A DNA stretch of 64,000 nt from Sminthopsis crassicaudata (GCF_048593235.1 NC_133621.1:302321146-302385145), one strand, 5' to 3'. Counted from the first letter of the stretch, positions 11,231 through 63,129 are shown. The notes: generated from the letters alone by a model not told the origin. Translations and numbers: made by a program.

Positions 11231-11687
11231 TAAAGCCCCACACGCTACATTCGAACCCGTGACTCCACAGCTTCTAGACGCAGAGTTTAAACCGCCGTCA
11301 GGCACAGACTGCGAGGGGCGGAGCCTAGGAAAGATCGGACTGTGATATCATCTGCCCCAGGGCGCGGTCTCCCTCCCTCCGCATCATTTACTTTGTCTCG
11401 CTCGCGTCGTCCCTTTCCCCGCCCAAGGGGCGTGTCCTGATCAGACCCTGCCCCCGGTGTTCTGGAAACCAGACCCCGCCCAGAGGCCCCACGTGACGAG
11501 CCTCACCCTCTCTCTTTCTCGCTCTCTCCATGCGCCTGCGCCATAATCTCCGCACCCTACACCCGCTCGGCCCCCGAGAGCCCCGCCCCTCGCGGAGCAG
11601 ACCCCGCCCCCTCCCTCCCTTCCCTCCCCTTTCCCCCCCTTTGTCCCCCACCCCCGGTCAGGGGCGGCCCGCCCCGGAAGGGCGAAA

Positions 11688-14600
11688 ATGGCGGTGAATC
11701 AGCACCACACCGAGGACAGCCAAAACGCCGTCATCATCCCTCATGGAGAAAGGTGCGGGGCGGAAGCGAGCGAGTGGGGGGGGCGGGGCCGGGGGGGACG
11801 AACAACTTCTGAGCCCGCCCCTCCCCACGCGTCACCACGGAAGGCCACACCCCTTTCACCCACGAAGAGCGTGGGCCGGGCCTTCTCGAAGGCGCATGGA
11901 GCGCGCGCCCCCCTCTGGTGGGGAGGGGAACGGAAGCACACTGGAGAGGCGGGAGAGCAGGCGCGCCCCCTGGTGATGCGGAGCGCCAGGGCATGTCAGT
12001 AGTTACAGCCTTTATTGAGCCGATTCTCCTGGATACCGGGCTCTGTGCTAACCACGTGGTGGGGACCCCCAGAATAGTTAGAAACAAAACAAGGGTTGTG
12101 GGAAGAAGGGTGCGGGACATCCCGGAACGCTTCCTGGAGGAGGCGCCATTTATTAAAGAATATAGAAGCACACGAGGAAGAGGGTGGGGCGCCCCAGTAG
12201 AGCTGGAGGCGCACGTGGGACACTTGGGGATGGGGCCCCTGGCAGCAGAGTGACAACAGCAGCGTTCCAGCAAAGGGGGGGGGCTGCAGCTGCGGGGTCA
12301 GCGAGGGACGGTGGGCGCGAAGGCGGAGAGCAGAGGGTCCGGCAGAGGCGCCCTCAGCCTAGGGTCGGCCGGCCCCCCAGAGCAGGAGGAGGCCCGGCGC
12401 CGAGAGCGCCTCAGCCCTTACCCCGGGCGTGCCCGTCCCGCGGCAGAGCCAGTGCCCCGCCCCCTCCCCGCCCGGAGCCTGTCCCGGTGCTCGTGACTGC
12501 TGCCGGGCACGAGGCTCTGACTGGTGGGTGACGTCACCGAGGAGCAGAGCGGCTGGCCCAGGACGGGACCTGGGGGGGGGAGAGAAGGGGGACCAGGGAG
12601 CTGATTTCTCAGATCGAGGGAACAGAAAGGGCTCAACCACCTCGGAGACCCCGAGAACGCGGAGGGAAAAGCCGACAAAGTTGGAGAGCGCCGCCCCCAG
12701 GCCCCGCGGCCTCCAGCCCCGTCACTTGCACGTGGCTAAGGTGAATGAGAACTGAACAGAATTCCCCCGACTCCAGCCCGGATGGCGGGACTCCTCAGTG
12801 GCCGGGGAGGGCGGTTGTGCCTGCATTGTGGCCTCCCGGTGACCCCGGTGCCCAGCCCCCGGGGGTGCTCTGTCAGTAGCGGGCCGGGGCCTTCTGGTCA
12901 ATAAAGCCGACCATTATGGAATATTCCATCCCAAAGGACCCTCATCATACTCATCACCCTATAGAGAAACTAAAACTTATTCTGAGCGCCCCGTTCCCGG
13001 TCACTTCTGGGAAGTCTCCCCAGATTGGGAGCTGTGCCCTCTGTGGCGGGTTTGTGCCGGGCTGTCGGAGTGACACCGCCACTCACTGGGCCCGCTGCCG
13101 CCGGGGAGCCGCGCCCCTCCCCCCTCTCCGACCCCTCCCCTCCGCCAGCTCCCGGCTGCCCCGGCCCGAGTCCTGCGCTCTTGCCTTCAGCGCCCATTTC
13201 CGTGGCCAGCTTGGCCGTCACGGGGTGGAGAGCAGCGAGGACGGCGCCCAGGCCCGGCGCACACCAGCCTGGCCTGGCACGGACCCCTGAGCCCCGGCTC
13301 CGCCCGCCTCACGGTCGTGTTTGTGACCGCACTTTGCAGAGCTCAGAGCAGCATTAAATGGACGAGAGCTCCCAGGCGGACCCCAGTCCGGAGCGATGGC
13401 CACCCCCATGACCTTCCTGCACAGCCCTGAGGAGCGCTGCTCAGCCCTTTGTGTGACCAAGCCCGGTGGAGGCAAACGCGCCGGGCCGAGCCTCCTGGGA
13501 CTCTCCGAGCCCCCGCTGGAGGACCGGCCTCGGTGCCCACTGGGTCTCGTCGCAAACCCGAGTCTCATTATTGGGGGCCGCCACTCCTCGGGCCATTTCT
13601 TCTCAATTCTTGGGTGACTCAGATTTATAATTTCTTTCTCAGTGAGACAGATCAACGAGCTCATTTATCCAGATGAGGTCAGAGATCCTTCCTTCTAGTC
13701 ATTTTCTATAATACTTAATCCCATTTTCTGTAGTACTTAATCCAACAAGCATTTATTAAATGCCTACTGTGTGCACCCAGACTTTTTTTCCTATCTTTTT
13801 GCTGAAGCGATTGGGGTTAAGTGGCTTGCCCCATGTCACACATCTAGGAAGTGTTAAGTGTCTGAGGTCCCATTTGAACTCGGCTCTATCCGCTGTGGCG
13901 CCACCTAGCTGCCCCCGCATCCAGATTTTTACCAAACATCCCTGTCCATCAGAACCATCCCAAAGTGCAATGTGGGGGGAGGGTGATCCGCTGGAGTCCC
14001 CTTCACTGAAGGCCCTTACACTGGATGCCCACTTGCTGGGCTACTGGAGAGAGGCTTCTTGGGCAGATACCAGCACTAGCGGAGGGGCAAAGGTGGATAG
14101 GTGACTGTTCTTGCCTTAAGGAATGGAGTAAAAACACTGATAACAGTTATTATTCTTGCTCTCATCCTTCCCTCCGTCATGCCAGGAGGGGGTTTGTGCT
14201 TCAAGCGCTGTCCAGACGAGTCACTTGGACTCCCACTGAGACGTCGTGAGGCGACGAGCCTCCGGCCGGCCATTCTCTCTTGTGTTGCTCTATCGGGGGT
14301 GCCTGGGCCCCGGCCTTGCCCCCTCGGTGCCCTGTGGGGCCAGCCCCGGTTCTGCTGCGAATTCTCTCCCAGAATGGCGCATGATCCCCAGGGTGGGGCT
14401 CCACCAGCCTGTGCGGACTTTGTTATTCTTTTGCTTTAGAGCCATCACATGGAAGGGGGAGGGTCCCATTAGCAAGAGAGGAGCTGAATGTGAACCCAGG
14501 CCCCTACCCCTGCTTCTGGCTCTGATATCTGGGGCCCCCAGACCTCAGGTGGGCAAAAGGCACTGGCCTGCAGAGATAAGGCCCAGTTAATAGAGACAGG

Positions 14601-50359: not shown

Positions 50360-51353
50360 AATAAAGAGATGAACAGACAATCTCAGATGATGAAATGGAA
50401 ACTATTTCCGCTCATATGAAAGTGTTCCAAATCACTACTGATCAGAGAAATGCAAATTAAGACAACTCTGAGATACCACTACACACCGGTCAGATTGGCT
50501 AAGATGACAGGAACAAATAATGATGAATCTTGGAGGGGATGTGGGAAAACTGGGACACTGATGCATTGTTGGTGGAGTTGCGAAAGAATCCGGCCATTCT
50601 GGAGAGCAATCTGGAATTATGCCCCAAAAGGTATCAAAATGTGCATACCCTTTGACCCAGCCATACTACTACTGGGCTTATACCCCAAGGAAATACTAAA
50701 GAGGGGAAAGGGACCTGTATGTGCCAAAATGTTTGTGGCAGCCCTTTTCATAGTGGCTAGAAACTGGAAGATGAATGGATGTCCATCAGTTGGAGAATGG
50801 TTGGGTAAATTATGGTATATGAATGTTCTGGAATATTATTGTTCTGTAAGAAATGACCAACAGGAGGAATACAGAGAGGCCTGGAGAGACTTACAGGAAC
50901 TGATGCTGAGTGAAACGAGCAGAACCAGAAGATCATTATACACTTCAATAATGTTACTGTACGAGGATGTATTCTGATGGAAGTGGAAATCTTCAACATA
51001 AAGAAGAGCCAACTCACTTCCAGCTGATCAGTGACAAAGCCGTCTCCAAGCAGAGAGGACCGCGGGGAGCTGCATTCTCCCTCTTTCTGTTGTGGTTCGC
51101 TCCTATTTTCTTTTTTTCTTTTTTTTTTTTTTTTTTGCTTTCTGATATTTTTCTTATGCAGCGACATAACTGTATAAATGTGAACCCATATATTGGATTT
51201 AATATATATTTCTACCATCCTTAACATAAATTGGAGTATTTGCCATCTGGGGGAGGGAGAGAAAAAATTGGAACACAAGGTTTTGCCAGGATCGGTGTTG
51301 AAAAATTACCCATGCATATATTTTGAAAATTGAAAAAAAACTTCAACAAAAAA
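50360..51353 (+). mobile_element. 5'-truncated L1 (ORF2 C-terminus, 3'UTR, A-rich tail)
   Basis: ORF 50450-50977 reads [19 protein letters not shown]...HCWWSC...[15 protein letters not shown]...[15 protein letters not shown], the typical L1 ORF2 end. A-rich tail at about 51330-51353. Confidence 0.95.
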
Positions 51354-51978
51354 CCATAATCTTCTTAATAAGGGGCCAGTGTTGTCTGCCAGGAAATAGA
51401 TAAAAAATTTCACTTAGCTATCTCCTCTAACACTTGTGGGATATTCAGGGAGAACTAGCACCTCAGGGCCCCCCCCCCCCGCAGCTCCCAGAGGCCCCTG
51501 CAGGCCGCCACCCCTGGTCCAACCGTCCCAGCAGACGGGCCAGACAAGGTTGAGGGTGACCGAGGGGCTGCAAAGCCTCAGTGAGTTAGGGGGCGTCCGC
51601 CCCAAGCGGGTGGAGACGTCCCCTGGTGGGTGAAAACAGCCTTTCTAATGGCCACGAAGGCGACCGGCCGGGGCCCGCTCAGACACTGACGTGGAGCCGG
51701 GCGTCCCGGGCGGCCTGACTTCCGTCCTGCCGCCGCCTTGGAGGACTCGGGGAGAGCGAGGCGGGGCTCCGGCGGCTCTGGCTCAGCCCGGGGTGACATC
51801 ATCTGTCCTCGGCGGCTGTGTCTGCCCCCCCACGCCGTCTTCCTCTCCGCCTGTCTCCTCATCTCCTCTGTCTCTCTCCCCATCCTCTCTCCTTTGTCTC
51901 TCTGTCCCGCCTCTCTCTGTGTCTGGGTCTCCCCTCTCTCGCCTCTTCTCACCATGCAGGCGCCCTCCCCCGGCAGCC

Positions 51979-54900
51979 ATGGTGGTCTTGCCCTTCTGGC
52001 ACTTACTCCTTTGGGGGGGCCTTTTGCTAATGGCCGAGAACTCTCAGCACTCTTTCCCCGGGGTCACGCCCCCTAGTGTCCCCACCAGACCAGTGGCTCC
52101 GTGGCTATCTGGCCTTGATTCTCTCTCCTCCAGCTCCCACCAGTGCAGGGCGTCTCCTCCGGCCGACCCGAAGGCAGCACGGCCCAGAAGAGACCCCCGG
52201 CCCCTCCCCCACTGTGGTCCGAACTGCTTCCTAACGTCCTGTTTCCCGAGCACCCACTGACCTCTAGGGCCCCGGGGTTCCGACCTCAGACTCCTTCTTG
52301 ACCTTTGACCCCCCTTTGCGTGTCCCCCGTTTCCCAGCCTTGCTATTTCTGACACCAGCCCCAGAACGGGCTCCCATGTCCCTCCTGCTGCTTCCTCCAG
52401 GGCCCCCCATCTTTCGTCGCTTCCGAGCCTTCATCCATTGGGCCAAGCAGGTCTCTGGACGACTTCCTTCCCAGAACAAAGCCGGAGGAGGGGGCGGGGC
52501 CCCTCTCTCACCCCCGGCCCCTCCACCGGCCAAGCTTTAAGTCCACCATGAGGGCGCCTCCTCCCAGAGCCTCCCCAGGCAGGGCCGCCGGACGTGCCGG
52601 CCCAGGCCGCGGCACAGAGGTGCAGAGCGGGCCGTTCCCTCTGTCTCAGCCCCAGCTTTCCCCTTCCCCGTGTCTCGGAGCTGATCCCACCCGTCTTGGC
52701 CACTGCTCACTTGGAGACCCCTTTGGGGAATATGTTCTCGGCGCTTCAGGCTCGGGTTCAAATTCTGACCCCGCTCCTTGGCTGTCAGTTAAGGGCCCGG
52801 GCCTGCAGCTCCGTCCAGGGGCCTTTTCTTCCCCATCTGTAAGATGAGGAGCCGGACGCCCCTCTCCGGCTCTAACTCCAGTTGTGTGCCCATGATCATG
52901 TGGGGCCGAGCCCCCGGCGCTGGGAACCTTGGGGGGGGGGGCGTGCCGGGCCCCGTCACCCTCCGCTAAGGGCCCCTTTGTCCGGCCGTGGCGTGTCTGG
53001 GCAGGGCGGGGGCCGCCGTCTCCCCACCAGACTGGCGGCTCCGGGAGGGCCGAGCCCCCGCTGGGTGAGTACATGGAGATCCCCTCCCAGGCTGGCAGGC
53101 CCCGCCCGGCCTCCCCCTGCCCGGGCCGGTGATGAGGCGCCCTGTCACAAAGCCCCCCTCCGTGTGAGGTCACACTGGGGCCCCATCCTGGGAAGGGCGC
53201 CGCCCGGGCAGACTTCAGAGGCCGGCCAGCGGAGAGCCAGCCACGGAGACTTCTCACCCGGGGCCTGGCGTTTGGAATATGGTCCTGCCCGCGCTGGGGG
53301 GGCCGGCCCGCAGCTAGAGCCCGCAAGGAGCCGCGGGGGAGGCCGGTCAGTGCGCGAGCTGACATGCCCAAAGGGTAGACCCCAGACTCCGAAATCACTG
53401 AGACCCCAGCTCAGGGTGAGCAGGCTCCCCAGGCCCTCCCGGCCCTCCCAGGCCCGTGCCCCCCCCCCCGCCGTAAATCCCCAGTAGAGCCTCAGGGGTC
53501 TGCTTCCTGGGGGGCTGGCGGGGGTTCCTGTCCCAGCGGGGAACTTGCCACTAGGAAGGACGGAGCCCCCAAGTCCTGACTCCGGGTTTCTGGCCGGACG
53601 AGGGCCCTTCCCCTCCGGCCTCGGCTTCCCGTGTGGCCCGGGGAGCTCCGGGACCCCTCCCCGCTCCCAGTCTGGGACCGACGCGGCTCATAAACCTTCC
53701 CCCGAGGGGCAGGGCTTAGAGGCCCTTAAGTGGTATTGAAAAAAGAGACCTTTGGGCTCAGAGCAAGGAGACACAGGGAGACCCCCGTCCTGCTGTTAGC
53801 TCTGGGGGACCTCGGCCAAGTCACCTCCCCCAGCCTCAGTTTGCTCATCCAGAAAATGGTTATATATAATGATAATAATTGTTGTTATTATTATTATTAT
53901 TATTGTTTCTGTGGTCCCCTGAAACCTTCCTTAACCCCAAGCCACAAAGTCTCCCAGCCTGCCCAGCTAATGCCGCCCCATGATCCCCCGCCGGGCTGAA
54001 GCAGGACTCTCCCTGACACGTGGGAGCCATTTGGGAGCAAGGACTGTTGTTTCTGGGTTTCTGTCCCAGTCTTTTGAGTTNNNNNNNNNNNNNNNNNNNN
54101 NNNNNNNNNNNNNNNNNNNNNNNNNNNNNNNNNNNNNNNNNNNNNNNNNNNNNNNNNNNNNNNNNNNNNNNNNNNNNNNNNNNNNNNNNNNNNNNNNNNN
54201 NNNNNNNNNNNNNNNNNNNNNNNNNNNNNNNNNNNNNCTCCTCCCTGCACTACCTAGTCTTGAAGTTCTCAAGTCCTGGGCACCCAGACTCACAATGGCC
54301 ACGGGTGGTGGGGAGTCCTGGATTCGAATCCCATCTCTGCTACTTCCCGGCCGCCTGGGTGAATTGGGAGGAGGGGGGGAGAAGCCTCCGAGCTGCCTTG
54401 AAGCGAGGGGGGACAGATGGGTTGGCCCCCATGCCTTCCGCCCCTTCCTTATCAATAAGATGAGGAGCGGCGAGAGCCCTGAGCCCGGAGTGGACCTCCA
54501 TCAGCCTCAGTTTCCCCTCCCAGAGCGGGCGTCTCCGTGGCTTGGGTGGGGGGCCCCAGGAGACCCTTTGGGAGATGTCCCTCGCTGATTACTGGCTTTT
54601 ATAAGCGGAGGCGGGGCATGAGTGGCGGTTGGAAGGGGGTGGGGACCCCGGGGGTCCTGAGACCACATCAGCAGCCTGGCAGGCCCAACTGCGCTATTAT
54701 CGCATTAATGGTAGAATTTCTTTTTCATGTACAAATCCACTTATTCCAATGCTATTGTTCGATAGATGAAGGCAAAAAAGCTTCATAGAAGTGAAAGTAG
54801 AAATAATAGAATTTCGAACACGGCCAGTGTCCGCGGACATCGCCGAATAAAGGCTCCTCAGTGTTTTCAGGGGGAGGCAACTGGGGTTGAGTGACTGGCC

Positions 54901-57900
54901 TAGGGTCAGCTAGGAAGTGTCCGAGGCTGGATTCGAACTCAGATCCCCCGACTCTAACCACTGCACCAGCCGTGACCCCAATCCTCAATAATTTTTAAGC
55001 ATGAGGCCCTGAGCCTGAGGAGGCTGAGAATCTCTGGACTGGGCCAGCGCTCAAGGGGCCTTGCTGCCCCAGGGCCGGAGCCCTCCACCGGGCTGACTTC
55101 TTCTCCTTCCCTCCCCAGACCGAAGATGGTGCTGATTTTGTGTTGCCCAAGAGAAAGGTAGGTGTGGGGCAGAGCCAGGTGCCACCCCCTGAGGCTGCCG
55201 GGGAAGAGGAGCCAGCGGGGCACAGTGGGCCTGGGTCCCCTTCCTCATTTGTGAAATGGGCGCTTAGGGGATGGTGGGGAGGACTCAGTGAGGAAGCGCC
55301 CAAGGCACGTGGCGAGCTTAAAGCTCTGAAACGGGAGCTGGGAGGATGAGGGAGCTGCCAGAAGGGTCCCAGCCCGGGGCCGCCCAGAAAGGGCCAGGGG
55401 ACTCTGCCCTCGCTGGGGAGCCTGGAGGAAACCAGCTTCTCTGTGCCTCAGTTCCCTCATCTGCAAAGCGAGGGCATTGGACCCGAGGACCGCCCAGAGC
55501 CCACCTGCTCCACATTTTGGGTCTGAGGCAGGAGGACCGGCCCAGAGTTCCGGTCAGGCCTGGGGAGGCGCCCGCAGACTGCAGGGGGTGGGCTTGGCTG
55601 CTCTAGTCAGGGGCCCCAGGGAGGCCCTCCCTGCCCTGAGCCTCAATGGGTCTGTCTGTAAAATGGGAGCGATAACACAGACCCCAGCTGCCTCCCTCCC
55701 CCTCAGCCCGTGCGGTGAGAAGAGTGCTCCCAGAAATGGCTCAGGGGATTTTGATGAGTTTTGTTATCCTGGGGGTCTAGAAGGAGGGGCTGCCCTCTGT
55801 CCCCCCAGACCCGGCAAGGGTAGCAGTAGCAGCCCACACAGCCCTGGCTCACAGTGGGGGAGAGGGTTTACTGGTGGAGAAAGGGCCATTATTAGCCACT
55901 CACTGTGAGCTTGGCCCTGGAAGTGCAAACCGCCATTTCTCCGGAGGAGGAAAGCTTAAGGCTCAGAGGGGGGAAGAAGGGACGGGCCCCAGGCGGCAGT
56001 GGGGTTCTGGCCCAGCTCCCTGGCTCCCAGCAGCGCAGCCTTTCCCACTGCTCCCCAAGGCCCCCCTCGTGAGGGGGCGCTGACCCCAGAGGGGACCTGG
56101 AAGCCTTGGGGAGCCGCGTGGCTCCGGGGCCCTGGACAGAGCCGAGGACTCACAGGCTTTCCAGGGCTGGGCCCTTCCCAAGCTGCTCTCGGGCCCGGCG
56201 CGGAAGGGGGGTCACGGCCCCTCCCCGAGTGCTGAAGCCACCCAGAAGGGAATGGCGTTTAAGGTCCCTGGCCAAAGAGAGGGCCCGTTTGCGGTCTGAG
56301 GTCCCTCCCTGGGCAGGCCACTGGGGAAGGAGGAGGCCACGGCCCCCCATGGGGTGTCGGGGGCAGATTCGGGTTCCGGGGGGGCTGGGAGGTGGGCTGC
56401 GGGGTCTCAGCTAGCTTGTTCTCTCTTGCAGAATTTCCAAGTCCCTATATGTGATGCAGGCTTTTTATTCTGGCAGGTGAGTTAGCCACCCTGCCCCAGG
56501 AGCCCAGGGGCTCCTCTCCCTGGCCAGGGCAGCCCCACGGGCGGCGGGGGGGTGGTCTGGGAAAGTCTGGGACCCCAGCCCGGCTCACAGCTGTCCTAAT
56601 CAGCCGCCCGAGCAAGGGGACAGGGAGGACCTCCTGATAAATGACCTCATCTCCCAGAGATGGAAAGCAGGGCTCAGGAGACAGAAACGGGGCTCAGGGG
56701 ATGGAAACTGGGGCTCAGGGAGACTTAGCCAAGCTCACGGGGGCAGAGCATGTCAGATCTGAAATAAATCAAAGCCGTGAGGGGAGGAAAAATAGTGTCT
56801 TGGATGGAGATGAGGGCAGCCAGCGGGGGGATGTCCGGGGGACTTCCAACCAAAGAGAAAAGGGTCGAGTTTTAGGGCCGGAGAGGAAGGAGGCCGCAGC
56901 GGGGAGCCAGGCTGGTCAGCGGCCTTGGCCATCCCGCAAGGACCTCCTCCTGGCCCGTGTGGCCCCGCTGCATGGATCCCAGCGGAGGGGGCGAGGACCA
57001 CGAAGGCCGAGACTCAGCTGGGTCCCCTCCACAAGGCGAGGTCTCAGTGAGGGGGGGCCGAGGGGGTGGGTCAGCCCAACCGGAGCAAGAATAAGTAGAA
57101 ATGTGGGGGGGTTTGTGACATTCTGACATTACAAGGATCGCTCGAGGGAATGGCTGTCGGATTACCTTAGTATACACAATCTCTCTCAGAACAGAAGTCT
57201 TCTGCCTCCAAATTCAGCGTTCCTTCTACTAGTTAATTTAACAACCAGCTCTCCCAAAAAACCCTCCACAAAATCCCCCAAATTTCTATACCCATGACAC
57301 ATTTAGTAACATTTTCTACATTACTTTAAATCCAGAGATGGACAAAACAATAAATCAGGCCCTGATTTCTAGCATTATCCCACTTCCAAAGTGTTGATGC
57401 TCACATAGAAAATTTAACAATCAGCTCCCTAGAGGGTCTGGAGCACTAGAATACACTGCTAAGACAGCTAATAAGCCAAATGGTCCTGAATCATCGGGGC
57501 CAGGGGGTCTCTATCGCTGCAGATAACTGACTCTAGGTGAAGTGGTCCCAAGGGCCACTATTTGTGATCTTGCTTTTTCGGTACAAGAGACCCTGGAGGA
57601 CACTGGGATAAATAACTCACCATGGGACCAGAGTTTTACCCAGACACAGTGACCTTAGCTGGGGCTGGGCAGAACATGTGGGCAGGGACCAGGCCCCAGG
57701 CAGCTGGCAAGCGGGGGAGGGACAGCAATCCCAGCCTGAGCTATTTATAGCAGGAGAATGGGCCACAGAAAATGCCCTTGAATTTCAACTCGGTTAGGAG
57801 CCGGGACCAGGGCCAAGCCCATCTTCCCCAGGTAAGAGATTCAGGACTTCCAGGGGAGTCAGCTGTTTGTGAATTCCCTTAGGAGGGGCCATTCACACAC

Positions 57901-58705
57901 CTATTGGCTAGCACTTCCCAGTTTCTTTACCTGCGGAGAGACCTAAGGGATCCGGAGCATAGCCTGCCTGATAATAAAAGCATCATGTAGCCTTGTCACC
58001 TAAAGGTGGAAGCTTCCTTGTCTTTCCTGGTAGCACATAGGGCACATAGCAGGCACTGGATCTCACTGGAGCTGGGCAGCCTGTGGGAGCCCAATAGTTT
58101 CCTGGGCGCCACTGGCTGAACAGCCTTGGAAAAAAGTTTCCCTTTACGAAAATGAAATGTGTTCACCTTCTTTTTTCCTCTGTTTCCCCCCGCTCTATCA
58201 TGGCTTTTCCCTTTTGTTCTTTTTTTCTCTTCCAACATGATTCGTAAAGAAATATTATATTAGTATATTATATATAATATTAAAAAGTTAATACACATGT
58301 AAAAATATAACAAAACATGTAAAAATGGAGGTTGAAAACTATATTACACATATTTAAAAAGTTAATATGCATGTAAAAATATAATAAACATATATATGAA
58401 AAATGAAGGTTGAAAACTATGTGCATAATATATGTGTAAAATATAATAAAACATGTAAAAATGAATGTTGAAAATTATATATGATATTTTAAAATTAATA
58501 TATATAAATGTAATAGACCATGTATATGAAAATGAATGTTGAAAATTATATGATATTTAAAATTTATATATATGTATATATATAATAGACCGTGTATGTA
58601 AAATGAATGTTGAAAATTATATGATATTTAAAAAATTAATATATATAAATGTAATAGAACATGTATGTGAAAATGAATGTTGAAAATTATATGTGATATT
58701 TTAAA

Positions 58706-58755
<50 letters not shown>

Positions 58756-61700
58756 ATATAATCAAACATATGTGAAAAAATGAATATTGAAAGCTATCTT
58801 TACATGTATTTGGAAAAATAAAATAATATTGAGGGGAAAAAACAAACCAAGAAAGAAAAGGGTTTTTCCTCTTTGTGACCCCGCAGGTGGGTCAGTTTCC
58901 CTTTCCCAGAATTCTGTCTTCCTCAGCAACCATCTCTGGGTCTGATGCTGGGTTTGGGGGCCTCTTGACAAAGGGGGGGTGGGGATCACCGACTGGTGAG
59001 ACCCCCACAGGAGGAACGACCTGCTTCTCTCTCTGCAGGCATGGTCTATTACTTCTTCCATGCAAGACCCGAGAACATCTCTGAGGATAACTTTGGGATT
59101 CTGGCAATCTCAAAGGTAAGGGCAGCGCCGCTGGGGCAGCTGGGCAAGACTGGCATCAGTCTGATGGGCAGGGATCGTTACTGCTGAAAGAGCATTAGCT
59201 GCTACTCTCTCCAAAGCGCCCCATTATACAGAGGAGAAAACTGAGGGGCCGCTTGTAAGGTCTCTGGGTCCCTGAGGCTCATTTTATGGGTGAGAGGGTG
59301 AGCGAGGGGGTGCACTGGCGGGCCGGCCTCCCTGTGGGGCAGGGGTCCTCCCACCATCGCTTCTTTCTTAGCTTCCCTCCTCTTCCTCTTCAGTGTGTAG
59401 GGGAGACCTTGAGGCCTGTGTGGGGCCCGGCAGATAAATGCTATCCAGTGACCCAGGTAAGAGAGCATCCCCCACCTCACAAGGCCCTCCCCAAACCCCA
59501 GGGGCCCTATCTTGCCTGCCCTGAGCCTTGGGGAGGGGAGGGGTGAGGGATATGGGGACTGAGCAGGGAGCATCAAGGTCACCTTGACAGCATCATGTCC
59601 CAGGTGCGGGCACCTCTAATTGTGAGGGGTTGGGGAGGGATTGGGCAGGAGGCAATCAGGCGGCCCAACTTCTGCCCTTTTCTCGGTGTCCCCACAGAAC
59701 CACAGAACCGAGAACCGGAAATGGAGAGCAAGGCCGGTGAGCTGGTCCGGCTGGGCGGGGGGCCCACCGCTGGTAGGATCCAGAGACTGTTTGGCTAGAC
59801 TCTCCCCATTTTACAGATGGGGAAACTGAGGCTCGGGGAAACATTAAACGACCCCCCAAAGTCACGCAGCTCTTTATATCACAGACCCGAGTCTTTAGAT
59901 CTGCAGATCTAGCTTAAAATCCAACCATGAATTAAACACCCTCTGTATTTGAGGTTCCTTAGCAGCTGCCAAGGGTTACTGAGATATGGCCGTCCTCCCC
60001 TTCCTCCTCCTCCCTGGGGCCCCGTATTCTGTTCCTCTTTCCATCTGGGAGGACCACCCCTGTGGCTCAGGAGGCTCGCCAAGCCCCCAGCCCCTCCGAG
60101 ACTTGGTGGCGGCCTTCCCACAGCTCCCTGGAGCTAGAGGGAGGAGCACGAGCCCGAGGGGAGCTCAGAGAGGGAGGACAGGCGGGCAGGCCGGCGGGCA
60201 GCTGGTGGGTCTGGAGTCACAGGGGCAGCTCCGATCGGCCGGCCCCTCTCTGAAGACGGGGCTTAGCTTGGGCCGGAACCAAGCCTTTGGCTGCTCAGGG
60301 AGGGAGAAGGGAGGGAGGCTGGAGCTTGAGAGACTTAGGCAGGGTAGCCCTCCTCCCTTTCCTCTTTGTTTCTTTTTCTCCCCTTCCTCTTCCTCCTCCT
60401 CCTCCTTTTCCCCTTCCTTCCTCTTCATCTTCCTCCTTCCCTTCATTAACTTCCTCTGAGAATTTTCCCCTTCTCTTTCTCCTTTTCCTCCCCTCCCTCT
60501 TCCCTCCTTTTCATCTTCTTCCCCTTCTTCTTTCTCCCCCCCTTCATTTTCCTCTCCCCCATCACCTTCCCCCTCCTCCCCCCCCCTCCCTGCTCCCCCT
60601 CCTCCCTGCTCCCCCTCCTCCCTGCTCCCCCTCCTCCCCCCCCTCCTCCCTGCTCCCCCTCCTCCTTCCCCTCGGACCTGGCCCTCAAGGACTTCTGACC
60701 ATTCCCCAGAAGCCTTCCCAGAGGACTGCCAAGATCCCAAACCCGGCAGTCGCCACCTTGGAGGCCTCTAAGGACCCAGTGGACTTCGTGGGCAAGGAGA
60801 AGCTGGGCGCGGCCTCCAAGGTGAGGAAGACCCCCCTGGGCTGGCTCGGCCGGGCCCTCCCGTTAGCGAGCAGCAGTGAAGGGTTTCAGGTGTTTCCTTA
60901 ACGGAAGCGCCCCCCTGAGATTTCGGAGGAAGGCGCTCGCATTCCAGTTGCATGGGCTCTGCCAGTCCTTCTCCAGCAGGTTTTACAGCTGGGGAAACCA
61001 AGGCAGACAAGGACTTGTGGGTCACACAGCTGCTGAGCAAGAAGACCTGCGTTCAGATCCGTACAAGGGCTTGGGTTACGCCGGGTGACTCCTAGGCTCC
61101 CCCCGGTGTTCTGTCACTGACTCTCTGTGGGGGTGCCTGCCTCAGTTTCCTCATCTGTGAAATGGGTGATTTTGTCCACAGGAGAACATGCATTTCTGGG
61201 TCTTCAAGTTCTCCTTAAACTCTGCTTCTCCAGGAAGGGCCTGGGGCCTCTTGGGGCCTCTCTGATTGAGGGGGGCTGGACCCCTCCTTCATGGAGCAGA
61301 TGCTCCCCCCCTCCTCCCAGCCCCACCCCCCTCGGGGCCCAGGAACAGCAGGGAAGGAGCCGGGGGCTCAGCCATGATGGCGGCTCCCCCCCCCCCCCAG
61401 CTTTGAGGCTCCATTTCCATCCCGCCCCACCCCCGACCTCTCACGGAGCCTGGCACACAGCCAGTGCTCAGCAAATGCTTGTGAATGAGTGAAAGACTGG
61501 ACACTGATGAGGGGAGGCCCCTTGCCCACCCAGGCCCCATTTCCCTGCCTCGGAGCTCTGCGCACCTCACACCTGGTGAGGAAACCGAGGTCCAGGAAAC
61601 CTCTGCTTTAAGATGGTGGAGATCTGGGGGGTGACTGGCTGAGCTGGGGCCGGCCCCAGGCTTCGCCTTCCCGACCCCTCGTCTCTTGATCCCACAGGAA

Positions 61701-62239
61701 AGTCAGCGCGAGCAGAAGGCGGCCAAGGTCTATGGCATGGGTAAGGCCGGCGGCAGCTGCCCCCCCCCGGAGCCCACCACCCCATGCTGGGCACAGGTCC
61801 CTGGGTCTCGCCCTGAGCTGCTCCCGTGGGGTGGGCGGGCAGCCAGGCCTGGACAGCATGGAGCCCGGGCCCGCACCAGCCAAGCCGGGCCTCTGGGTCT
61901 CAAGGCTCTGGAAAAGGCCGGTGTCCACTGAGGGGCGGGCAGAGCCAGTTCTCCTGGCTGCAGAGGGGGTAAGGGCCCGTGGGAGCTGGCCGCGGCAGGG
62001 ACCCCACTGCACCTTCAGTCAGGTGCGCCATAGGCCCACCCCGGAGCCCCCTCCCCGGGCCCTCAGAAAGCAGGGTGGGCCCAGGACGGGGTCCCCGCTG
62101 ACAAGCCCCCACCCTTCTCTGTGTGTCCCTTTCAGAGCCCCCTACGGACAGAGGGCAGGGCTGGGTCAGCCAGCTTCTCCAAGGCCTCTGGGTAGACTGG
62201 TTCTCAGCTCCCAACCTCCCCAAGACCCAGAACCACTAA
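51979..62239 (+). CDS. Candidate unannotated multi-exon gene, possibly a secreted protein of about 240-280 aa. Candidate exons: 51960-52062 (or to 52216), 52401-52450, 53031-53064, 55119-55157, 56432-56476, [57754-57831], 59011-59115, 59394-59456, 59698-59736, 60710-60820, 61698-61740, 62136-62239 (TAA)
   Basis: Signals seen: a 140-nt pyrimidine tract plus acceptor at 51959; Kozak gccATGG at 51979 with a hydrophobic N-terminus; a series of strong Py-AG / GTRAG exon pairs that join into one open frame; stop TAA 62237-62239 followed by AATAAA 62255-62260. No homology recognised. The first two donors and the 59010 acceptor are weak. Confidence 0.45.
54081..54237. other. Assembly gap (157 N)
   Basis: N run. 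Confidence 1.
56659..56723. repeat. Degenerate ~21-bp tandem repeat x3 (gatggaaa..ggggctcagg)
   Basis: Direct inspection. Confidence 0.7.
57102..57405 (+). mobile_element. Probable solo LTR (304 bp)
   Basis: Starts TGTG and ends CACA, is flanked by a perfect 6-bp direct repeat TAGAAA (57096-57101 / 57406-57411), and has AATAAA at 57349-57354, about 50 nt from the 3' end. Confidence 0.6.
58290..58830. repeat. AT-rich minisatellite: 7 copies of an AAAATGAATGTTGAAAA-core unit (about 60-105 bp) with embedded (TA)n
   Basis: Core starts at about 58321, 58399, 58457, 58529, 58600, 58670 and 58775. (TA)n at about 58709-58751. Confidence 0.9.
60340..60670. repeat. Polypyrimidine/polypurine tract ending in a 16-bp unit (ctccctgctccccctc) x4
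   Basis: About 330 nt of almost pure C/T on the + strand. Confidence 0.9.
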
Positions 62240-63129
62240 AGGAAGGAAGGTCCTAATAAAGCCTGATTGAAAATGCCGTCGTTGGGTGCATCTGTACCGC
62301 CCGAGTTCTGTCACTGGGCTGTAGCTCCCCGGAGAAGCGCCGCCTGGGGCAGGGAGGAGGCACAGGGTGAGGAGGATGGGGAGACATCCCGGGCCAGAGT
62401 TGTTCAGATCGCCTCGGTGCCCCCCCCACCGCTCCAGGACAGACAGCAGCCCAGGGCCCACCCCGGCCATGGGCTGTGAGGCCTTCAGAGGAGCGCAGCG
62501 GCCCGCCAAGTGCAGGGGCAGTGTCCAGGCTCCCTCCTCCTGACTGCCCTCTCCACTGCGCCCCCATTTCTTTTTTCAGTGTCCTTTTTCTACTGTACCA
62601 ACTTGTTCCTGGTTAATTGTGAGGTCCACTAGGGACCTCAGCCCTTGTCTTTCCCCTCGTTAATTGCTAAAACCCCTTTTCTTTGCTCAAATCCCCACAT
62701 AGACTTGGCTCACTATTAACAGTGTAACAAAATCTTTGCCTCTTCATTTGGAGATGGCCCAAACCCACAAATTCTTTTGAGACACCCTTGGGGGACCGGA
62801 CCGGAACCTCTTCTCCCCGATACTTGGTAGCAAGCCCCACCAGTCCTTCCTGTGACGGAGTGCTGCTCCAGGTGTGCTCTTACCAACACCGAAGACTGGA
62901 CAAGAGTCCCCTGCCTTCTCTTCCTCTGGGGGGGTCCCCAAAGTCTGTAGGAGTCTTCAGCCTCTGAGACCGGGCTCCTAGTCCTGCTCCCCTCCGCGGC
63001 CCAGTCTGTCCCCTGACTGCCTCTGCCCCAGGCTTCACACAGGGAGCTGATGTTTTTAATTAATGGGAGGAGACTCTCATATACGTGTCACTATTGAATT
63101 ACATTAGGTCCATCGTCCTGGCTCTATAG

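What the first reader, a model, noticed from the sequence alone, without database searches (positions are those of the whole stretch)
51793..62285. Unrecognised multi-exon gene downstream of NDUFA6: phase-0 exon chain with a signal-peptide-like start
Seen in the sequence: a CpG island (~51580-51800), a donor at 51793, and a 140-nt pyrimidine tract ending catgcag| at 51959. Next come a strong Kozak gccATGG (51979) and MVVLPFWHLLLWGGLLLMA-ENS. Strong exon pairs follow at 53031-53064 (|gtgagt), 55119-55157, 56432-56476 (|gtgagt), 57754-57831 (|gtaaga), 59011/59039-59115 (|gtaagg), 59394-59456 (|gtaaga), 59698-59736, 60710-60820 and 61698-61740 (|gtaagg). A terminal exon starts at 62136, with TAA 62237-39 and AATAAA 62255. 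Seven internal exons are multiples of 3 (39,45,78,105,63,39,111), and two (57754, 59394) are open only in phase 0. They join into one frame: ...TEDGADFVLPKRK|NFQVPICDAGFLFWQ|EERPASLSAGMVYYFFHARPENISEDNFGILAISK|CVGETLRPVWGPADKCYPVTQ|NHRTENRKWRARP|KPSQRTAKIPNPAVATLEASKDPVDFVGKEKLGAASK|ESQREQKAAKVYGM|EPPTDRGQGWVSQLLQGLWVDWFSAPNLPKTQNH*. Established: in human this interval holds the divergent lncRNA NDUFA6-DT before CYP2D6, with no coding gene I know of. Inference: either a marsupial or ancestral secreted-protein gene lost in eutherians (the lncRNA could be its remnant), or a spliced lncRNA. Caveats: I selected the exons by eye, the 5' donors are weak, and a shifted frame is also partly open.
Basis: partly seen in the sequence, partly recalled or inferred. 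Interest (0 to 1): 0.78.

Follow-up and report, generated by a model that had tools for sequence, protein, structure and literature searches.

The report
Unnamed conserved membrane-protein gene beside NDUFA6

Summary
Partly confirmed.

Evidence that it is coding:
- Exons are much better kept than introns (95.6% vs 84.8% with devil; 82.3% vs 68.0% with koala).
- dN/dS is 0.37-0.43.
- A profile search finds relatives in all four placental superorders, every one named "uncharacterized protein LOC...". There is no Pfam or PDB match.

So the gene was not lost in eutherians, and as an annotated locus it is not new.

The product of about 170 aa has a Cys pair, one transmembrane helix, an invariant GETLRPVWGxxDKCYPVT motif, a disordered middle and a Trp-rich C-terminal helix.

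ATG 51979, 53031-53064, 57754-57831 and acceptor 59011 are not conserved. The real start is ATG 55126, in another frame of exons A and B.

The dunnart reference has one extra G (56459-56460) that shifts the frame inside the membrane helix. The assembly gap lies in the intron upstream of the start codon.

The parts
53125..53415 (+). Candidate promoter and non-coding first exon, ending at a donor AGG|GTGAGC (53415|53416). Inferred only.
   Evidence: This is the only block between NDUFA6 exon 1 and exon A that is conserved in all three species. Identity is 86.7% with devil and 74.3% with koala, against 64-84% in neighbouring stretches. The donor GT is kept in dunnart, devil and koala. Exon A has a conserved acceptor, so an upstream exon must exist. 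There is no RNA evidence.
54081..54237 (.). Assembly gap (N), inside the intron upstream of the start codon
   Evidence: Searches show the gap. Its flanks are colinear with devil: 52647-54080 matches L001 6593-8106, and 54674-56699 matches L001 8230-10243. All eight coding exons lie downstream of it. I did not fill it.
55119..55157 (+). Coding exon A. Start codon ATG 55126-55128 in the context GAAGATGG; encodes MVLILCCPRE plus a split Arg codon.
   Evidence: The tblastn match to devil P0002 residues 1-11 is 100%. Nucleotide identity is 97% with devil, and the acceptor and donor are kept in devil and koala. Dog has the same exon boundary.
56432..56476 (+). Coding exon B (ISKSLYVMQ..., first half of the transmembrane helix). 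It is 45 nt here and 44 nt in devil and koala. The extra G is in the GG at 56459-56460.
   Evidence: Apart from the one inserted G it is 100% identical to devil; koala is also 44 nt. Read from ATG 55126, the reference letters give 40 aa and then a stop.
59039..59115 (+). Coding exon C (split Gly codon, then MVYYFFHARPENISEDNFGILAISK; second half of the transmembrane helix)
Evidence: Identity is 98.7% with devil.
59394..59456 (+). Coding exon D: CVGETLRPVWGPADKCYPVTQ, the invariant core motif of the family
   Evidence: At protein level it is identical to devil. It holds 10 columns that are invariant across 39 mammals. Devil vs koala has 5 synonymous and 1 non-synonymous change.
59698..59736 (+). 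Coding exon E: NHRTENRKWRARP, a basic patch
60710..60820 (+). Coding exon F: 37 aa, variable and predicted disordered
   Evidence: This exon found devil protein P0001 in the database (86% identity, E 7.7e-10). See; the koala acceptor is shifted by one codon.
61698..61740 (+). Coding exon G: ESQREQKAAKVYGM plus a split codon
62136..62239 (+). Last coding exon H: ...GWVSQLLQGLWVDWFSAPNLPKTQNH, stop TAA 62237-62239
   Evidence: 91% identical to devil at protein level and 97% at DNA level. The Trp-rich helix is kept in placental mammals. The model predicts a helix at residues 144-158.
62255..62260 (+). Polyadenylation signal AATAAA, 16 nt after the stop
   Evidence: TAATAAAGCCTG is identical in dunnart, devil and koala.

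Best explanation
Window 55.1-62.3 kb (+ strand) holds the fat-tailed dunnart orthologue of an unnamed protein-coding gene. The gene is present across therian mammals and always sits tail-to-tail with a CYP2D gene; in marsupials NDUFA6 lies on the other side.

Shown: eight coding exons (A-H) specify about 170 aa.
- A 14-residue N-terminus with a Cys pair and net positive charge.
- One hydrophobic helix, about residues 15-34.
- The invariant motif GETLRPVWGxxDKCYPVT, containing the only conserved Cys outside the N-terminus.
- A basic patch, then a variable, disordered stretch (acidic in placentals).
- A Trp-rich C-terminal helix ending PKTQNH.

Inferred mechanism: a small single-pass membrane protein inserted by its N-terminal signal-anchor. 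Charge bias (+2 before the helix, -2 after it) predicts that the short N-terminus faces the cytosol, where its Cys pair is a candidate palmitoylation site, and that the tail lies on the luminal or outer side. The invariant motif and the C-terminal helix are the likely contact surfaces for a partner. Release of the tail at the basic patch is possible, but that is speculation.

The transcript probably starts at a non-coding exon ending at 53415.

In the reference letters, one extra G in exon B shifts the frame inside the membrane helix. I judge this about 60-65% likely to be a residual single-base error of a noisy-long-read assembly. Otherwise it is a very young null allele.
For: - Orthology: exon F hits devil KAM8980996.1. 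The full devil models P0001 and P0002 and koala LOC144454902 follow the same exons.
- Synteny: NDUFA6 (-), the gene (+), p450 (-) in devil and koala. The gene (+) followed by p450 (-) in dog and sloth.
- Selection at DNA level: exon identity 95.6/82.3/81.7% against intron identity 84.8/68.0/66.6%. One gap column in 521 exon columns against 26% gap columns in introns.
- Selection on the frame: dN/dS is 0.365, 0.373 and 0.43 in the conserved frame, against 0.63-1.32 with 6-8 stops in the other frames. Fisher tests for dN<dS give p=0.012, 2.3e-5 and 4e-4.
- Family: 48 clusters at E<=1e-3 in 1.84 billion representatives and 99 proteins in the word search. The names cover Laurasiatheria, Glires, Xenarthra, Afrotheria and marsupials.
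- Transcription elsewhere: a 1077-base Logan contig carries an unbroken 174-aa ORF, so spliced mRNA exists in at least one species.
- Structure: AlphaFold2 gives helix 11-36 (pLDDT 79-92) and helix 144-158; the rest is disordered.
- Frameshift. Nothing else is damaged in the dunnart copy, and the dunnart lineage has 3 synonymous and 6 non-synonymous changes, none in exons A-C and only one, synonymous, in exon D.
- Assembly: the published dunnart assemblies were built from ONT and PacBio CLR reads with Flye and polished with Pilon (PMC11091235).
Against: - There is no dunnart RNA or read evidence.
- As written, the reference does not encode the full protein.
- No protein-level evidence (Ribo-seq, mass spectrometry) was seen for any family member.
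- Most marsupial annotations in the database carry no protein for this gene; only devil and koala appeared. That could mean low expression.
- dN/dS of about 0.4 is only moderate constraint, and exons E-G evolve fast.
- Topology, palmitoylation and cleavage are predictions from sequence alone.
Confidence: 0.82

Rival explanations
1. The extra G is real. The dunnart, or the sequenced animal, carries a very young null or hypomorphic allele. Translation from ATG 55126 stops after 40 aa. Alternatively, a product lacking most of the membrane helix starts at Met 59041 (context GGCATGG).
For: The reference letters show it, with no compensating change. ATG 59041 has a good context. Dunnart-lineage changes are 6 non-synonymous to 3 synonymous, against 6 to 7 in devil, a non-significant hint of relaxation.
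Against: The other 167 codons are intact. Exon B is otherwise 100% identical to devil. None of the dunnart changes falls in exons A-C, and exon D has only one, synonymous. Single-base indels are the typical leftover error of CLR/ONT assemblies in GC-rich DNA (local GC is about 0.67). Two lesions within 15 kb fit an error-prone stretch at least as well as two real nulls.
Confidence: 0.3
2. The locus is a spliced non-coding RNA, a counterpart of human NDUFA6-DT. Its exons would be kept for RNA-level reasons, and the open frame would be incidental.
For: In human the same position, downstream of CYP2D6, is annotated as the lncRNA NDUFA6-DT (PMC10324673; papers listed). No primate or mouse/rat protein appeared in the searches. 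There is no proteomic evidence. Few marsupial annotations call it coding.
Against: dN/dS is 0.37-0.43 only in one frame; the other frames give about 0.6-1.3 and carry stops. No frame-breaking indel occurs in devil or koala. The same frame and exon phases run from marsupials to four placental superorders, with 10 invariant residues. Synonymous changes dominate in exon D (5 to 1).
Confidence: 0.06
3. One reading: a secreted protein of 12 exons starting with a cleavable signal peptide at ATG 51979 and read in phase 0 through 53031, 55119, 56432, 57754 and 59011.
For: The frames are open in the dunnart letters and the splice consensus is present. In dunnart, phase 0 through exon B with acceptor 59011 does reach MVYYFF in frame.
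Against: ATG 51979 is ACG in devil and GTG in koala, and devil has TGA at codon 7. Exon 57754 has a frame-breaking indel and a lost donor in devil and is absent in koala. Acceptor 59011 is absent in koala. Exon B is 44 nt in devil and koala, so phase 0 cannot be kept there. Placental proteins align to the +1 frame of exons A and B.
Confidence: 0.02

Closest known systems
Tasmanian devil 'uncharacterized protein ACOB8E_002292' (KAM8980996.1, 152 aa; older models UPI0002270B4F 170 aa and G3WHN0) and koala LOC144454902
   Same: Orthologues. They occupy the same position next to NDUFA6 and CYP2D, use the same eight coding exons and phases, and are about 93% (devil) and 72% (koala) identical in protein.
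   Different: Devil and koala have a 44-nt exon B and an unbroken frame; the dunnart reference has 45 nt. The GenBank devil model starts at an internal Met in exon B. The conserved start is in exon A.
Placental 'uncharacterized protein LOC...' family, e.g. dog LOC111097639, dingo LOC112666670, Rice's whale LOC132373627, kangaroo rat LOC105992058, elephant G3ULY1, sloth LOC119541313
   Same: They share the N-terminal CC plus transmembrane helix, the invariant GETLRPVWGxxDKCYPVT motif, the Trp-rich C-terminal helix ending PKTQNHE, the exon boundaries at RE|R and ILAG|, and a neighbouring convergent CYP2D gene.
   Different: Identity to marsupials is only 31-53%. The placental middle part is longer and acidic, and the basic patch reads RRRVRSGKK. 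Many isoforms exist. None has a name, a Pfam family, a solved structure or a paper.
Human lncRNA NDUFA6-DT (formerly NDUFA6-AS1)
   Same: It occupies the same position: downstream of CYP2D6, on the NDUFA6 side (PMC10324673).
   Different: It is annotated and studied as non-coding (papers). Sequence homology was not tested here, because human sequence was not to be used. The candidate first exon in dunnart lies about 3.6 kb from the NDUFA6 start, so it is not a tight head-to-head promoter.
Small single-pass membrane proteins of the 'small integral membrane protein' kind (a works-like comparison only)
   Same: Short length, one membrane helix, an otherwise disordered chain, and poor annotation.
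   Different: No sequence or profile similarity to any named family was found. At 170-210 aa it is longer than most microproteins.

Membership tests
Unnamed therian gene family (devil KAM8980996.1 / koala LOC144454902 / dog LOC111097639) | Position: + strand gene between NDUFA6 (-) and a convergent CYP2D gene (-) | tested here: met
   NDUFA6 exon 1 ends at ATG 49536 on the - strand. The window is colinear with devil L001 up to 63596 = L001 17552, and the devil p450 gene begins at L001 18104, just past the window end. Koala, dog and sloth have the same order.
Unnamed therian gene family (devil KAM8980996.1 / koala LOC144454902 / dog LOC111097639) | Eight coding exons with the same boundaries and phases | tested here: met
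   All AG/GT sites are kept in dunnart, devil and koala. The dog boundaries RE|R and ILAG| match.
Unnamed therian gene family (devil KAM8980996.1 / koala LOC144454902 / dog LOC111097639) | Invariant motif G-E-T-L-R-P-V-W-G-x-x-D-K-C-Y-P-V-T | tested here: met
   Exon D translates to CVGETLRPVWGPADKCYPVTQ. The invariant columns of the 39-sequence alignment fall in this motif.
Unnamed therian gene family (devil KAM8980996.1 / koala LOC144454902 / dog LOC111097639) | N-terminal Cys pair and transmembrane helix in one frame with the rest of the protein | tested here: inconclusive
   The coding letters are present and, apart from one inserted G, identical to devil. That G (56459-56460) breaks the frame. 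I could not test whether it is real.
Unnamed therian gene family (devil KAM8980996.1 / koala LOC144454902 / dog LOC111097639) | Trp-rich C-terminal helix ending PKTQNH(E) | tested here: met
   Exon H encodes GWVSQLLQGLWVDWFSAPNLPKTQNH. See the alignment and the predicted helix 144-158.
Unnamed therian gene family (devil KAM8980996.1 / koala LOC144454902 / dog LOC111097639) | Purifying selection on the shared reading frame | tested here: met
   dN/dS is 0.365-0.43, with p down to 2.3e-5; the other frames give about 0.6-1.3 and carry stops.
Divergent-promoter lncRNA (NDUFA6-DT type) | No conserved open reading frame; substitutions blind to codon position | tested here: not met
   The frame is conserved from marsupials to placentals and dN/dS is well below 1 in one frame only.
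Divergent-promoter lncRNA (NDUFA6-DT type) | Transcription start head-to-head with NDUFA6, within about 1 kb | tested here: inconclusive
   The only conserved candidate first exon lies about 3.6 kb from the NDUFA6 ATG, with an L1 fragment in between. No RNA data were available to place the real start.
   The codon is ACG in devil and GTG in koala, and devil has an in-frame TGA at codon 7.
Any Pfam-A family or protein of solved structure | Significant profile match | tested here: not met
   There are no Pfam hits for the dunnart exons or for devil P0001. A 39-sequence profile finds no PDB chain at E<=1.

The most novel reading that the evidence does not exclude
A membrane-protein gene at least as old as the marsupial-placental split, and kept in all four placental superorders, may have lost its coding frame in primates and in mouse/rat. 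If so, the much-cited human 'lncRNA' NDUFA6-DT next to CYP2D6 is the transcribed relic of this gene, or still hides a shortened ORF. That would explain why a widely conserved mammalian protein has no name and no literature.
Probability: 0.35. Interest if true: 0.6.

Novelty: new member of a known kind. Interest (0 to 1): 0.45.

Why it matters
For the dunnart genome this adds a gene. No dunnart protein with these exons turned up in the protein collection. It also flags a single-base frame break that is either an assembly error to fix or a natural null allele.

More broadly, it draws attention to a therian-wide gene family that automated pipelines predict in dozens of species, yet it has no name, domain, structure or paper. 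One likely reason is that no primate or mouse/rat protein is annotated for it. It lies beside CYP2D6, one of the most studied pharmacogenes, where the human annotation shows only the lncRNA NDUFA6-DT. If the positional equivalence is also homology, this is a clean example of a conserved coding gene turned into a lncRNA in our own lineage. Dog, cow or bat cells would then be the place to find out what the protein does.

Tried and rejected
- Pfam on six exon translations, two in-frame ORFs and devil P0001 gave nothing; the only hit was a chance Cellsynth_D match at E 0.14. A PDB profile search found nothing.
- The ESM Atlas returned only an unnamed chordate cluster at 0.93, probably the protein's own. 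A mannosidase-IC-like cluster at 0.86 is below the level worth trusting.
- I did not run fold search. The model is mostly disordered (mean pLDDT 54.7), so matches would be meaningless.
- The look-up of encoding contigs had no record for bat P0006.
- Rejected on conservation: ATG 51979, exon 53031-53064, exon 57754-57831, acceptor 59011 and donor 51793 (GT absent in koala).
- I looked for a way the extra G could be compensated. There is no nearby -1 change or alternative donor, and acceptor 59011 adds 28 nt, which does not restore the frame from ATG 55126.
- I did not search a joined dunnart protein. Searches used single exons by reference, an unspliced in-frame ORF with a region, and the devil and koala database proteins as stand-ins. 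One search translated exons A+B+C locally, only to find where the shifted frame stops.
- No human contig was fetched or compared.
- Literature searches for NDUFA6-DT / NDUFA6-AS1 found only papers treating it as a lncRNA biomarker, none on a coding ancestor.

Full report
**What is in the sequence**

The neighbourhood reads:
- PHETA2 (+) at about 41.5-42.4 kb;
- SMDT1 exon 1 (+) at about 44.0 kb;
- NDUFA6 exon 1 on the minus strand, ending at ATG 49536;
- an L1 ORF2 fragment at 50450-50977;
- a GC-rich stretch from 51.5 to 53.7 kb.

The gap 54081-54237 was checked first, as asked. It lies between the GC-rich stretch and the first coding exon, upstream of the start codon. Its flanks are colinear with the Tasmanian devil: 52647-54080 matches L001 6593-8106, and 54674-56699 matches L001 8230-10243. 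No coding exon of any orthologue model falls there, so continuity or frame across the gap does not affect the coding sequence. I did not fill it.

**How the gene was identified**

Pfam found nothing in the exon translations.

Exon 60710-60820 was given inside its unspliced in-frame ORF, with a region restriction. It hit one protein: Tasmanian devil 'uncharacterized protein ACOB8E_002292', 152 aa, 86% identity, E 7.7e-10.

Using the devil database protein as a stand-in, the word search added koala LOC144454902 (72% identity over the full length) and a bat protein.

The devil and koala loci both show NDUFA6 (-), this gene (+) and a cytochrome P450 gene (-).

**The true gene model**

Aligning dunnart exons to the devil and koala loci gives eight coding exons with conserved acceptors and donors:

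| Exon | Coordinates |
|---|---|
| A | 55119-55157 |
| B | 56432-56476 |
| C | 59039-59115 |
| D | 59394-59456 |
| E | 59698-59736 |
| F | 60710-60820 |
| G | 61698-61740 |
| H | 62136-62239 |

The stop is TAA 62237-62239. AATAAA at 62255-62260 is identical in all three species.

- ATG 51979 is ACG in devil and GTG in koala, and devil has an in-frame TGA seven codons in.
- Segment 53031-53064 is no better conserved than its surroundings.
- Exon 57754-57831 has a net 5-base indel and GA in place of the GT donor in devil, and is missing in koala.
- Acceptor 59011 is not kept in koala.

Between NDUFA6 and exon A, only one block is conserved in all three species: 53125-53415. It ends at a conserved donor, AGG|GTGAGC. 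Exon A has a conserved acceptor, so I take this block as the likely promoter and non-coding first exon. This is an inference without RNA support.

**Is it coding?**

Exons are far better kept than introns:

| Pair | Exon identity | Intron identity |
|---|---|---|
| dunnart-devil | 95.6% | 84.8% |
| dunnart-koala | 82.3% | 68.0% |
| devil-koala | 81.7% | 66.6% |

Between dunnart and devil there is one gap column in 521 exon columns, against 26% gap columns in introns.

I made Nei-Gojobori counts exon by exon and skipped split codons. In the conserved frame dN/dS is 0.365 (dunnart-devil), 0.373 (devil-koala) and 0.43 (dunnart-koala). The two other frames give 0.63-1.32 and carry 6-8 stops. The excess of synonymous change is significant: p=2.3e-5 for devil-koala and 4e-4 for dunnart-koala.

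A profile of devil, koala and bat proteins, scored against 1.84 billion representatives, found 48 clusters at E<=1e-3 and 30 at E<=1e-10. The word search with a 15-sequence alignment found 99 proteins. Every name recovered is 'uncharacterized' or 'hypothetical' protein. The species include:
- whales, deer, bovids, camelids, pig and horse;
- dogs, bears, cats, hyaenas, mustelids and seals;
- many bats, plus hedgehog and pangolin;
- kangaroo rats, ground squirrel, mole-rats, hare and pika;
- sloth and tamandua;
- elephant.

Dog and sloth loci again show the gene followed by a convergent P450 gene. Dog shares the exon boundaries. One 1077-base Logan contig carries an unbroken 174-aa family ORF, which can only come from spliced mRNA.

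No primate, mouse, rat, monotreme or non-mammal name appeared. That absence depends on what has been annotated, so it is only suggestive.

**The protein**

The 39-sequence alignment shows four parts:
- an N-terminus M-x4-CC-x-RER-x2-K-x-LY-x2-Q-x-FILAG-x-VYYYF;
- invariant residues G54, R58, P59, W61, G62, K66, C67, Y68, P69 and Q72 in exon D;
- a basic patch (RRRVRSGKK in placentals), followed by a variable and often acidic stretch;
- a C-terminal GGWVPQLLRKLWLGWFPASDIPKTQNHE.

Devil residues agree with the placental consensus at 8 of 11 positions in exon A, 10 of 15 in B, 17 of 21 in D and 18 of 33 in H. They agree at only 3 of 13 in E and 8 of 37 in F.

AlphaFold2 run with this alignment predicts helix 11-36 (pLDDT 79-92), helix 144-158 (about 61-66) and disorder elsewhere. 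The hydropathy maximum is residues 16-34, with net charge +2 before it and -2 after it in devil, koala and dog. By the positive-inside rule (established knowledge), this predicts a signal-anchor with the N-terminus in the cytosol and the tail outside.

There is no Pfam, PDB or named Atlas relative. The mechanism I commit to is a small single-pass membrane protein whose invariant motif and C-terminal helix bind a partner. The Cys pair as a palmitoylation site, Cys67 as a disulphide and cleavage at the basic patch are hypotheses only.

**The frame break**

Dunnart exon B is 45 nt; devil and koala have 44. The difference is one extra G, the GG at 56459-56460, in an exon otherwise 100% identical to devil. 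A local translation across exons A, B and C, done only to locate the stop, gives 40 aa and then TGA when read from ATG 55126. I found no compensating change.

The remaining codons are intact. With koala as outgroup, the dunnart lineage has 3 synonymous and 6 non-synonymous changes. None falls in exons A-C; exon D has one, synonymous. Devil has 7 and 6.

The published dunnart assemblies were built from ONT and PacBio CLR reads with Flye and polished twice with Pilon (PMC11091235). In such assemblies, single-base indels survive in GC-rich DNA. I do not know whether this window comes from exactly that assembly. The same window carries another single-base lesion in PHETA2 (note s1-189176, not re-tested here).

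I put about 60-65% on an assembly error and about 30% on a real young allele.

The decisive test is reads over the site. 

**Comparison with what is known, and novelty**

What remains is a conserved, unnamed family with no domain, no structure and no literature. Searches found only papers on the human lncRNA NDUFA6-DT.

That lncRNA lies downstream of CYP2D6 (PMC10324673), which is the position this gene holds in other mammals. Whether it is the gene's remnant was not tested. No human sequence was fetched, compared or searched.

The scan's notes hold nothing on NDUFA6 or CYP2D elsewhere.

**Verdict**

- This is the dunnart member of an automatically annotated but uncharacterised therian gene family.
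- It carries a probable reference error in exon B.
- Interest is moderate.

Noticed in passing
window 58264-58751; L001 about 11449-12090: An AT-rich tandem array (period about 71/141 bases, ending in a (TA)21 run) sits in the intron between exons B and C. Devil has a matching array at the colinear place, so the minisatellite predates the dunnart-devil split.
   Followed up: partly
window 50450-50977 (+): A 175-codon open frame that reads like the C-terminal end of an L1 ORF2 protein lies between NDUFA6 exon 1 and the GC-rich stretch. It was recognised from memory only and was not searched against any database.
   Followed up: no
window 60340-60680: A long CT-rich, low-complexity tract with several overlapping short-period repeats lies just upstream of the exon F acceptor. 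It also creates a 204-codon open frame running into the exon.
   Followed up: no
window 53150-53180; L001 7171-7206; L002 8581-8618: Inside the candidate promoter block, the sequence GCCCTGTCACAAAGCCCCCC followed by GTGAGGTCACAC (GTGATGTCACAC in koala) is nearly invariant in three marsupials. It looks like a transcription-factor site, but none was tested.
   Followed up: no
L001 8106-8230 (devil): At the place colinear with the dunnart assembly gap, devil has about 120 bases of TCATTCA-like simple repeat and no exon. The dunnart stretch 54238-54673, just right of the gap, has no devil counterpart in that search and looks like a SINE. This describes devil only and was not used to fill the gap.
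   Followed up: partly
P0003 (devil G3WHN0), P0005 (koala isoform X2), dog isoforms X1-X4: Database isoforms skip single in-phase exons: F in devil G3WHN0 and D in koala X2. Placental models vary widely in the middle part. This may be real alternative splicing or prediction noise.
   Followed up: no
   Followed up: no
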